In this document: positions 15,565 to 15,611 of the stretch, in pieces
Layout of the letters: each line of letters starts with the position of its first letter
How positions within the stretch are numbered: position 1 is the stretch's first letter
Source of the DNA: Euprymna scolopes
Taxonomy: Eukaryota
Assembly: GCA_053919585.1 (NCBI GenBank)
Contig: CM132790.1
DNA: 64,000 bases
Direction: 5' to 3' (one strand)
The notes under the pieces: model-generated
Told to the model about the DNA's origin: nothing
The model's database searches: none
The model's input: the letters and a program-made list of their open reading frames with translations, nothing else
Translations under genes and position numbers: made by a program

Positions 15565-15611
15565 CCTTAATCCGCGGAGTTTCGAAGAAATACTCTCCTT
15601 CTCATCAGAGG
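15565..15611 (-). ncRNA. Minimal type I hammerhead ribozyme motif (Penelope/retrozyme type), slightly degenerate
   Basis: Minus strand reads cct-CUGAUGA-gaaggag(agua)uuucuuc-GAAA-cuccgcggau-UA-agg: intact core, 7-bp stem II, palindromic stem III (uccgcgga), and a 3-bp stem I. Confidence 0.7.

What the first reader, a model, noticed from the sequence alone, without database searches (positions are those of the whole stretch)
15565..15611. Minimal hammerhead ribozyme with palindromic stem III in otherwise unannotated DNA
Seen: the minus strand reads cct CUGAUGA gaaggag-agua-uuucuuc GAAA cuccgcggau UA agg. Both conserved core strands are intact, stem II has 7 bp with a tetraloop, and stem III contains the palindrome uccgcgga. 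Predicted cleavage is after UUA (between 15568 and 15567). Established: minimal type I hammerheads with a short palindromic stem III are typical of Penelope-like elements and non-autonomous retrozymes, and can cleave as dimers. Inference: the flanking ~15.4-16.2 kb is a PLE pseudo-LTR or retrozyme-like unit, and a partner copy could lie in the N-gap at 16178-16353. Caveats: C15.2 faces U rather than G and stem I is only 3 bp, so this copy may be inactive.
Basis: partly seen in the sequence, partly recalled or inferred. Interest (0 to 1): 0.8.

Follow-up and report, generated by a model that had tools for sequence, protein, structure and literature searches.

The report
Hammerhead motif in abundant Penelope-style mini-retroelement
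The hammerhead-ribozyme motif is real, but it is one of about 40,000 near-identical copies carried by a small protein-less jumping element that inserts into (TA)n microsatellites the way Penelope-like retrotransposons do, which is a known kind of element, and whether this variant cuts its RNA is unproven.

Summary
Observation confirmed. The minus strand 15611-15565 has both hammerhead core boxes, a 7-bp stem II with G10.1-C11.1, the palindrome UCCGCGGA, a UUA cleavage triplet and a 3-bp stem I. A full descriptor hits once in the window and never in 20 Mb of simulated sequence.

It is not single-copy. The 41-nt motif (up to 3 mismatches) occurs about 40,100 times in this 5.9-Gb genome, probably a mollusc.

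The motif lies about 100 nt from the 3' end of a non-coding retroelement with these features:
- two subfamilies, about 1.27 kb and 0.45 kb;
- frequent 5' truncation;
- (TA)n on both flanks;
- head-to-head inverted partial copies;
- an optional 146-nt 3' extension in about a quarter of copies.

These are Penelope-like-element (PLE) hallmarks. There is no ORF, no pseudo-LTR and no tandem array, so it is neither a PLE pseudo-LTR nor a classical retrozyme. It is best read as a PLE-dependent non-autonomous element.

The C15.2/U16.2 mismatch is the family's master state (18,329 versus 114 copies), not decay of this copy. Folding predicts a hammerhead only as a dimer. A sister family (843 copies) keeps the same architecture with compensating changes.

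In vivo cleavage is only weakly suggested. The autonomous partner was not identified.

Earlier notes of this scan report other hammerhead/PLE-style families elsewhere in this genome. Verdict: new member of a known kind.

The parts
15565..15611 (-). Minimal type-I hammerhead motif: stem I 5' strand, CUGAUGA, stem II, GAAA, palindromic helix III, UUA, stem I 3' strand. Predicted cleavage between 15568 and 15567.
   Evidence: The 41-mer is identical to the modal family sequence.
15602..15608 (-). Core box CUGAUGA (C3-A9)
15584..15601 (-). Stem II (GAAGGAG/UUUCUUC, 7 pairs including 2 G-U) with AGUA loop
   Evidence: Stem II is also present in the predicted dimer fold.
15580..15583 (-). Core box GAAA (G12-A15.1)
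15569..15579 (-). Helix III strand C15.2-UCCGCGGA-U16.2-U16.1. The 8-nt palindrome pairs between two RNA molecules. C15.2 faces U16.2.
   Evidence: The mismatch is family-wide.
15469..16177 (-). Body of this copy of the subfamily-A non-autonomous element. It runs 5'-wards to the edge of the N gap and has an internal deletion of about 125 bp relative to L061:7402-7527. Position 15469 is the 3' end used by short-form copies (...GCUCAUA followed by (TA)n).
15323..15468 (-). Optional 146-nt 3' extension, present in about a quarter of copies of both subfamilies. It ends ...UUUCAUUA followed by (TA)n. I read it as the stretch between two alternative reverse-transcription start sites.
   Evidence: The analogy is to the PLE 'tail' described in PMC11167929.
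15272..15322 (.). (TA)n microsatellite abutting the 3' end of the element (target or tail)
   Evidence: The same junction is seen in nearly all copies.
16178..16353 (.). N gap. The element enters it from the 3' side. Nothing homologous to the family lies beyond it. Not filled.

Best explanation
The motif is a genuine Penelope-type minimal hammerhead. It sits in the 3' module of one copy of a very abundant, non-coding, non-autonomous retroelement.

The element:
- Subfamily A is about 1.27 kb and subfamily B about 0.45 kb.
- Both share a 3' module of about 350 nt and an optional 146-nt 3' extension.

Proposed mechanism (inferred):
- The RNA is copied by target-primed reverse transcription by an enzyme supplied in trans, most likely the RT/GIY-YIG protein of a Penelope-like element (PLE).
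- That enzyme nicks (TA)n tracts and starts cDNA synthesis at one of two sites, after ...GCUCAUA or after ...UUUCAUUA.
- This produces 5'-truncated copies, (TA)n on both flanks and head-to-head partial copies.

The hammerhead lies about 100 nt upstream of the proximal start site. It cannot fold alone because helix III is an 8-nt palindrome. It can form only as a double hammerhead between two RNAs or two adjacent copies.

The family master sequence carries a C15.2/U16.2 mismatch and only 3 bp of stem I. Self-cleavage is therefore probably weak or protein-assisted.

Every copy that spans the site was copied from uncut RNA. Cleavage is therefore not what defines the element's ends.

Shown: motif, copy number, unit structure, (TA)n junctions, the family-wide mismatch, and the dimer-only fold prediction. 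Inferred: PLE dependence, two RT start sites, and weak or assisted catalysis.
For: - Copy number: 19,856 + 20,249 matches of the 41-mer with up to 3 mismatches, and 0 for the reversed control.
- Unit ends: there is a sharp 3' end ...GCTCATA followed by (TA)n in nearly all of about 60 copies. About a quarter continue through the same 146-nt extension and then (TA)n.
- 5' ends: they are graded by truncation, with a sharp full-length 5' end at L061:6827 in 37 of 40 hits.
- Coding capacity: no ORF longer than 91 aa and no internal direct repeat in the unit.
- Target: (TA)n lies on both sides of full copies (L038; L061) and at many 5'-truncation junctions.
- PLE-style arrangement: L061 has an inverted 5'-truncated copy abutting the 5' end. 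Close inverted pairs are seen among listed positions.
- Conservation: subfamilies A and B are 77% identical overall but identical over 58 consecutive columns spanning the hammerhead.
- Sister family C (843 copies; core variants) keeps the same architecture. It has a flipped pair in stem II, a G-C to A-U change in the palindrome and a paired A15.2-U16.2.
- Folding: the dimer minimum-energy structure is a double hammerhead and the monomer structure is not.
- PLE machinery in this genome: 15,395 GIY-YIG candidates. All 150 scored are above cut-off, and many sit in stop-free frames of about 806 aa and in inverted pairs.
- Literature: hammerheads lie near PLE 3' ends and some PLE clades target (TA)n (PMC8557442). 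Minimal dimer-dependent PLE hammerheads are described in PMC4209133. Two internal RT start sites, a protein-assisted hammerhead not needed for insertion, and a cut site about 85-92 nt upstream of the RT start are reported in PMC11167929.
Against: - No autonomous PLE sharing this 3' module was found.
- The two GIY-YIG hits on contig C1 have no exact A/B hammerhead within 3 kb in the listed positions.
- Rfam hammerhead models do not score the motif.
- The 15.2-16.2 pair, normally paired or palindromic in PLE hammerheads, is mismatched.
- No RNA-end or circular-RNA data could be obtained.
- Perfect hammerhead conservation between A and B is partly an ascertainment effect, because loci L031-L060 were chosen by exact motif. 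The neighbouring roughly 160 nt are also 85-95% identical.
- Fold energies are no better than those of shuffled sequences.
Confidence: 0.72

Rival explanations
1. Classical metazoan non-LTR retrozyme. Tandem monomers are transcribed, cut at each hammerhead, ligated into circles of a few hundred nt, and the circles are the transposition templates.
For: It has a type-I hammerhead, is non-coding, has low GC and coexists with PLEs, as described in PMC7229834. One locus (L031) has two same-strand copies 638 bp apart. PolyA RNA-seq assemblies hold 37-40% of the element's sampled words.
Against: Copies are dispersed, about 1 per 150 kb. Each has one hammerhead. Unit ends are fixed about 100 nt (or about 245 nt) downstream of the cut site and at a separate 5' terminus, not at the cut site. 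The two L031 copies are each bounded by their own (TA)n. The hammerhead is minimal, not the canonical type with loop-loop contacts.
Confidence: 0.08
2. Pseudo-LTR of an autonomous Penelope-like element.
For: The hammerhead lies near a 3' end, the flanks are (TA)n, and inverted partial copies occur.
Against: The full unit is 1.27 kb with no ORF longer than 91 aa and no terminal direct repeat. Its 5' end is sharp in 37 of 40 hits, with unrelated DNA upstream. No RT or GIY-YIG sequence was seen next to any of about 65 copies in hand.
Confidence: 0.04
3. SINE-like element mobilised by a LINE that ends in or targets (TA)n. The hammerhead-like motif would be a hitch-hiking relic with no present role.
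For: 5' truncation and microsatellite 3' ends also occur in LINE/SINE pairs. LINE fragments are common beside copies. The C/U mismatch, the short stem I and the Rfam silence fit a dead ribozyme.
Against: The LINE seen next to copies ends in ...GTGTAAAAAAAAA and shares nothing with the element's 3' module. A hammerhead, a (TA)n target, head-to-head copies and an optional 3' extension together are PLE signatures (PMC8557442, PMC11167929). The motif is the best-conserved block between subfamilies and is retained with compensating changes in family C.
Confidence: 0.1

Closest known systems
Minimal and atypical type-I hammerheads of Penelope-like elements (Cervera and de la Pena 2014, PMC4209133)
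   Same: Intact CUGAUGA and GAAA boxes, a G10.1-C11.1 pair and a long helix II (7 bp; theirs are 6-8). Helix I is short (3 bp; D. virilis has 2). Helix III is palindromic and only works as a dimer. Copy number in an invertebrate genome is massive.
   Different: C15.2 faces U16.2, whereas they report positions 15.2-16.2 as palindromic. The palindromic insert is 8 nt, longer than their 2-4 nt. There is no extra unpaired base between positions 9 and 10.1. The motif sits in a protein-less element rather than a pseudo-LTR.
Poseidon PLE of Anolis carolinensis, PAc (Frangieh et al. 2024, PMC11167929)
   Same: The hammerhead cut site lies about 100 nt upstream of the reverse-transcription start (85-92 nt in PAc). 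Two alternative 3' ends give an optional extension in a fraction of copies. Targets are AT-rich. Copies that span the site imply that uncut RNA is the template.
   Different: PAc is autonomous and arranged in tandem, and its 'tail' is 30-40 bp. Here the extension is 146 nt, the element has no ORF and the target is (TA)n. None of the biochemistry has been done for this element.
Metazoan non-LTR retrozymes (Cervera and de la Pena 2020, PMC7229834; bioRxiv 10.64898/2026.07.22.740005)
   Same: Non-autonomous, AT-rich, carries a type-I hammerhead, and is thought to depend on or derive from PLEs.
   Different: Those are tandem monomers of 150-450 bp cut at each hammerhead and circularised. This family is dispersed, has one hammerhead per copy and has termini unrelated to the cut site.
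(TA)n-targeting PLE clades Neptune and Naiad (Craig et al. 2021, PMC8557442)
   Same: Insertion into (TA)n, inverted 5'-truncated copies at the 5' end, an optional extension at one end, and tens of thousands of copies in marine invertebrates.
   Different: Those are coding elements of 3-4 kb, and Naiads lack canonical hammerheads.

Membership tests
Hammerhead ribozyme (type I, minimal PLE-type) | Conserved core C3-U4-G5-A6-N7-G8-A9 and G12-A13-A14 | tested here: met
   CUGAUGA at 15608-15602 and GAAA at 15583-15580
Hammerhead ribozyme (type I, minimal PLE-type) | Helix II closed by G10.1-C11.1 | tested here: met
   7 pairs including 2 G-U, AGUA loop, G-C closing pair
Hammerhead ribozyme (type I, minimal PLE-type) | Cleavage triplet N-U-H with A15.1-U16.1 and a paired or palindromic 15.2-16.2 | tested here: inconclusive
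   UUA and A15.1-U16.1 are present, but C15.2 faces U16.2. This is the family master state: 18,329 exact 28-mers versus 114 with A15.2.
Hammerhead ribozyme (type I, minimal PLE-type) | Helix I and a helix III able to form (here as a dimer) | tested here: met
   Stem I has 3 bp. The dimer minimum-energy fold gives an 8-bp intermolecular helix III plus trans stem I, which is a double hammerhead. The monomer fold is not a hammerhead.
Hammerhead ribozyme (type I, minimal PLE-type) | Match to curated covariance models (Rfam Hammerhead families) | tested here: not met
   No hit at gathering score or at E<=10 on 301 nt. My assumption is that these models do not cover the minimal PLE variants.
Hammerhead ribozyme (type I, minimal PLE-type) | Structure kept by compensating changes in relatives | tested here: met
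   Family C versus A: 10.3/11.3 A-U to U-A; three single changes that keep pairing; the palindrome centre G-C to A-U; 15.2-16.2 paired; stem I 6 bp. This rests on only two independent lineages, and two of the changes are CpG transitions.
Hammerhead ribozyme (type I, minimal PLE-type) | Self-cleavage at the predicted site | not testable with these tools
The 5'-junction census is suggestive only.
Autonomous Penelope-like element / pseudo-LTR | RT plus GIY-YIG ORF flanked by direct pseudo-LTRs | tested here: not met
   No ORF longer than 91 aa in the 1.27-kb unit, no direct repeat and a sharp 5' end
Metazoan non-LTR retrozyme | Head-to-tail tandem monomers, each with a hammerhead, with unit boundaries at the cut site | tested here: not met
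   Copies are dispersed with one hammerhead each. Their ends lie in (TA)n about 100 or 245 nt past the cut site.
Metazoan non-LTR retrozyme | Expressed as circular RNA | not testable with these tools
PLE-dependent non-autonomous element | PLE insertion signatures: AT-rich or (TA)n target, 5' truncation, inverted 5'-truncated partner, optional 3' extension, hammerhead near the 3' end | tested here: met
PLE-dependent non-autonomous element | 3' module shared with an autonomous RT/GIY-YIG element of the same genome | not tested
   PLE-type GIY-YIG frames are abundant, but no further genome sequence could be cut out

The most novel reading that the evidence does not exclude
In this family the hammerhead may be kept mainly as a structural and dimerisation module that recruits the reverse transcriptase about 100 nt upstream of the priming site, rather than as a processing ribozyme.

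On this reading, the most successful lineage in the genome (about 40,000 copies) is one in which catalysis has been deliberately weakened: C15.2/U16.2 and a 3-bp stem I, compared with the fully paired sister family at 843 copies. That would give a natural test of whether hammerhead cleavage helps or hinders Penelope-type retrotransposition.
Probability: 0.25. Interest if true: 0.55.

Novelty: new member of a known kind. Interest (0 to 1): 0.3.

Why it matters
What hammerheads do in Penelope-like elements is still an open question. Published work shows that cleavage is dispensable for insertion in vitro, and that hammerhead-less clades proliferate well.

This genome offers a large natural data set bearing on that question:
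- a family of about 40,000 copies whose master hammerhead carries a helix-III mismatch;
- a much smaller sister family with a fully paired motif;
- two alternative 3' ends that look like two reverse-transcription start sites.

For annotation, it matters that tens of thousands of hammerhead hits in such genomes are dispersed retroelement copies. They are not individual ribozyme genes or retrozyme loci.

Tried and rejected
- Rfam scans of the window, the motif region, a full-length unit and three subfamily-B loci gave no hammerhead, tRNA-like or other credible RNA family.
No RNA ends, joints or circles could be examined. All runs found were assembled contigs anyway.
- I tested whether retrotransposed copies record in vivo cleavage.
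  - (TA)5 within 0-14 nt upstream of GGACTATCCAYTTATCT gives 718 forward (redundant) and 184 reverse matches. About two thirds of 38 listed loci begin at or within 1 nt of A1.1.
  - A control window upstream gives 507/123.
  - A control downstream shows an equally strong hot spot at a TA dinucleotide, 8 of 19.
  - TA microhomology therefore confounds the signal. Only about 7-10 loci with non-TA filler start exactly at A1.1. I treat this as suggestive only.
- A LINE-type ORF tail just upstream of the family-C motif in L005 looked like a LINE 3' UTR carrying the hammerhead. Other copies of that LINE end at ...GTGTAAAAAAAAA before the motif, so the two are merely adjacent.
- A pattern with a wrong spacer returned nothing and was corrected.
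- Fold energies of monomer and dimer do not differ from those of shuffled sequences, so they carry no weight.
- A first MAFFT alignment mis-registered the core. I did not build a covariance model because only two independent lineages were in hand.
- Pfam scans of window ORFs found only a LINE-type RT at 23007-23420.

Full report
**Observation**

- CCU, then CUGAUGA;
- a 7-pair stem II (GAAGGAG/UUUCUUC, two G-U pairs, closed by G10.1-C11.1) with an AGUA loop;
- GAAA;
- C15.2, the palindrome UCCGCGGA, U16.2, U16.1 and A17;
- AGG.

The predicted cut lies between 15568 and 15567.

The two core boxes by themselves are no more frequent than chance. A descriptor that adds the helices and the palindrome finds only this site in the window. 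It finds nothing in 20 Mb of composition-matched simulated sequence scanned on both strands.

Rfam's hammerhead models do not score the motif at any threshold. I take this to reflect their focus on canonical forms, but it remains a failed test.

**Copy number and genome**

The window is part of a 5.9-Gb assembly with at least 46 very large contigs and about 30% GC.

The 41-nt motif, allowing 3 mismatches, occurs 19,856 + 20,249 times. The reversed control occurs 0 times. The exact 28-mer across helix III occurs 18,329 times.

RNA-seq assemblies labelled mollusc or invertebrate metagenome hold part of the element. The refutation criterion 'single-copy' therefore fails decisively.

**The unit that carries it**

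I compared about 65 copies.

*3' end*
- The 3' end is sharp: ...UUAACUGUUUGCUCAUA followed by (TA)n.
- This end lies about 99 nt after the cut site, at window 15469.
- About a quarter of copies, in both subfamilies, run on through the same 146-nt segment to ...UUUCAUUA and then (TA)n.
- The window copy is of this long form (15468-15323, with (TA)n to about 15272).

*5' end*
- 5' ends are graded by truncation.
- The longest copies share a sharp start at L061:6827 in 37 of 40 hits. This gives a full unit of about 1.27 kb (subfamily A).

*Subfamily B*
- It is about 0.45 kb (L038:1190-1641).
- It has its own 5' head and shares only the 3' roughly 350 nt with A.

*What the unit lacks*
- There is no ORF above 91 aa.
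- There is no internal direct repeat.
- No RNA family matches.

*Insertion context*
- Full copies are bounded by (TA)n on both sides.
- Many truncated copies abut (TA)n at their 5' junction.
- In L061 an inverted 5'-truncated copy sits head-to-head against the full copy.
- Among listed genomic positions, close pairs are commoner than a uniform spread predicts, and most are inverted.

*The window copy*
- It is not truncated at 16046. It has an internal deletion of about 125 bp.
- It continues, matching L061:7246-7401, to the edge of the N gap at 16177.
- Nothing beyond the gap belongs to the family. The gap was left alone.

**What kind of element**

A hammerhead about 100 nt from the 3' end, a (TA)n target, 5' truncation, inverted head-to-head partners and an optional extension at one end form the set of signatures described for endonuclease-bearing Penelope-like elements (PMC8557442).

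The optional extension has a published mechanistic explanation. The Anolis PLE reverse transcriptase starts internally at two sites. The sequence between them is the 'tail' present in a fraction of copies. That element's hammerhead cut site lies about 85-92 nt upstream of the start (PMC11167929).

Here the extension is longer, at 146 nt versus 30-40. Both alternative ends have the form CAU(U)A followed by (TA)n.

The genome holds a large, young PLE population:
- 15,395 GIY-YIG candidates;
- all 150 scored are above the curated cut-off;
- many lie in stop-free frames of about 806 aa;
- they are often in inverted pairs a few kb apart.

I could not show that any of these shares this 3' module, because no further genome sequence could be extracted. 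The two GIY-YIG hits on contig C1 have no exact A/B motif nearby in the listed positions. PLE dependence is therefore the best-supported inference, not a demonstrated fact.

The element is not a pseudo-LTR, because it has no ORF and no terminal repeat. It does not meet the definition of a metazoan retrozyme either. Those are tandem monomers bounded at the cut site and expressed as circles (PMC7229834).

**Is the hammerhead functional?**

*For*
- It is the best-conserved block between subfamilies. Overall identity is 77%, with 58 consecutive identical columns over the motif. The surrounding roughly 160 nt are also 85-95% identical, and half of the loci were picked by exact motif.
- Both A and B are plentiful among exact matches, so both masters must carry this sequence.
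- A sister family C (843 copies) has the same layout at 67% identity:
  - stem II with one flipped pair and three pairing-preserving single changes;
  - the palindrome centre changed from G-C to A-U;
  - A15.2 paired with U16.2, giving a perfect 12-nt palindrome;
  - a 6-bp stem I.
- Family C splits into CUGAUGA copies (about 40%) and CCGAUGA copies (about 45%).
- RNAcofold gives a double hammerhead for two copies and a non-hammerhead fold for one.

*Against, or unknown*
- The C15.2/U16.2 mismatch is the master state of the whole A/B family: 18,329 copies versus 114 for the paired A15.2 variant.
- Stem I has 3 bp.
- Published PLE minimal hammerheads cleave poorly in vitro.
- No RNA data could be laid.
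- A census of 5' junctions shows many short copies that begin at the predicted +1 position. Controls show that any TA dinucleotide is a junction hot spot in this (TA)n-targeting system. Only a handful of loci are informative.

Every copy that spans the site must have been copied from uncut or re-ligated RNA. This agrees with the in vitro finding that unprocessed RNA is the main template.

**Comparison and novelty**

The motif belongs with the minimal and atypical PLE hammerheads of Cervera and de la Pena (2014). It differs in the 15.2/16.2 mismatch and in the long palindromic insert.

The carrier belongs with PLE-derived non-autonomous elements, a kind now argued to include animal retrozymes (bioRxiv 10.64898/2026.07.22.740005). 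It is dispersed rather than tandem.

Earlier notes of this scan describe other hammerhead-bearing, (TA)n-inserting families and PLEs elsewhere in the same genome. This is one more family of a system already seen here, and a very large one.

I rate it a new member of a known kind. Its modest interest comes from the contrast between an attenuated but hugely successful hammerhead lineage and a fully paired minor one.

Noticed in passing
window 13781-14315: A foldback of two inverted copies of a different repeat, with its centre near 14140, abutting a long (TA)n at about 14316-14370. Another note of this scan reads it as two inverted Penelope-like 3' ends with hammerhead half-cores. Several held loci share parts of 13500-14400.
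   Followed up: no
L005:2683-2850, plus 843 genomic places: Sister hammerhead family C: stem II GAUGAG/UUCAUU, perfect 12-nt palindrome AAUCCAUGGAUU, 6-bp stem I. It ends ...CAGAAUUUCCAU followed by (TA)n. Copies split into CUGAUGA (about 40%), CCGAUGA (about 45%) and UCGAUGA (about 9%) cores. The first two differ by a CpG/TpG transition.
   Followed up: partly
window 22251-23420 (-), also 59501-59630 (+) and 1434-1599 (-): Fragments of a LINE whose ORF ends ...FFLRTARLWNS.P...FKSNVNKFL and whose 3' end is ...GTGTAAAAAAAAA. Pfam RVT_1 matches at 23007-23420. Copies of it lie beside several hammerhead-element copies (L005, L031, L038, L052, L062).
   Followed up: partly
G000 contig C1 positions (for example 28937279/28938281, 25601092/25602683, 147711651/147711735): Copies cluster. 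There are five pairs within 5 kb among 100 listed exact 28-mers, where about one pair is expected, and four of the five pairs are in opposite orientation. This fits repeated or head-to-head insertion into the same (TA)n tracts.
   Followed up: partly
G000 places (for example C12:14496712-14504984, C13:17111032-17117229): A very abundant and apparently young RT/GIY-YIG element: 15,395 candidates and many stop-free frames of about 806 aa, often as inverted or tandem clusters 2-5 kb apart.
   Followed up: no
window 38000-42000: A GC-rich island (45-47% GC against about 30% elsewhere) with ORFs of 141-175 aa on both strands that match no Pfam family.
   Followed up: no
window 16037-16046 versus L061:7402-7527: The window copy lacks about 125 bp that most long copies have. 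This internal deletion first looked like a 5' truncation.
   Followed up: yes
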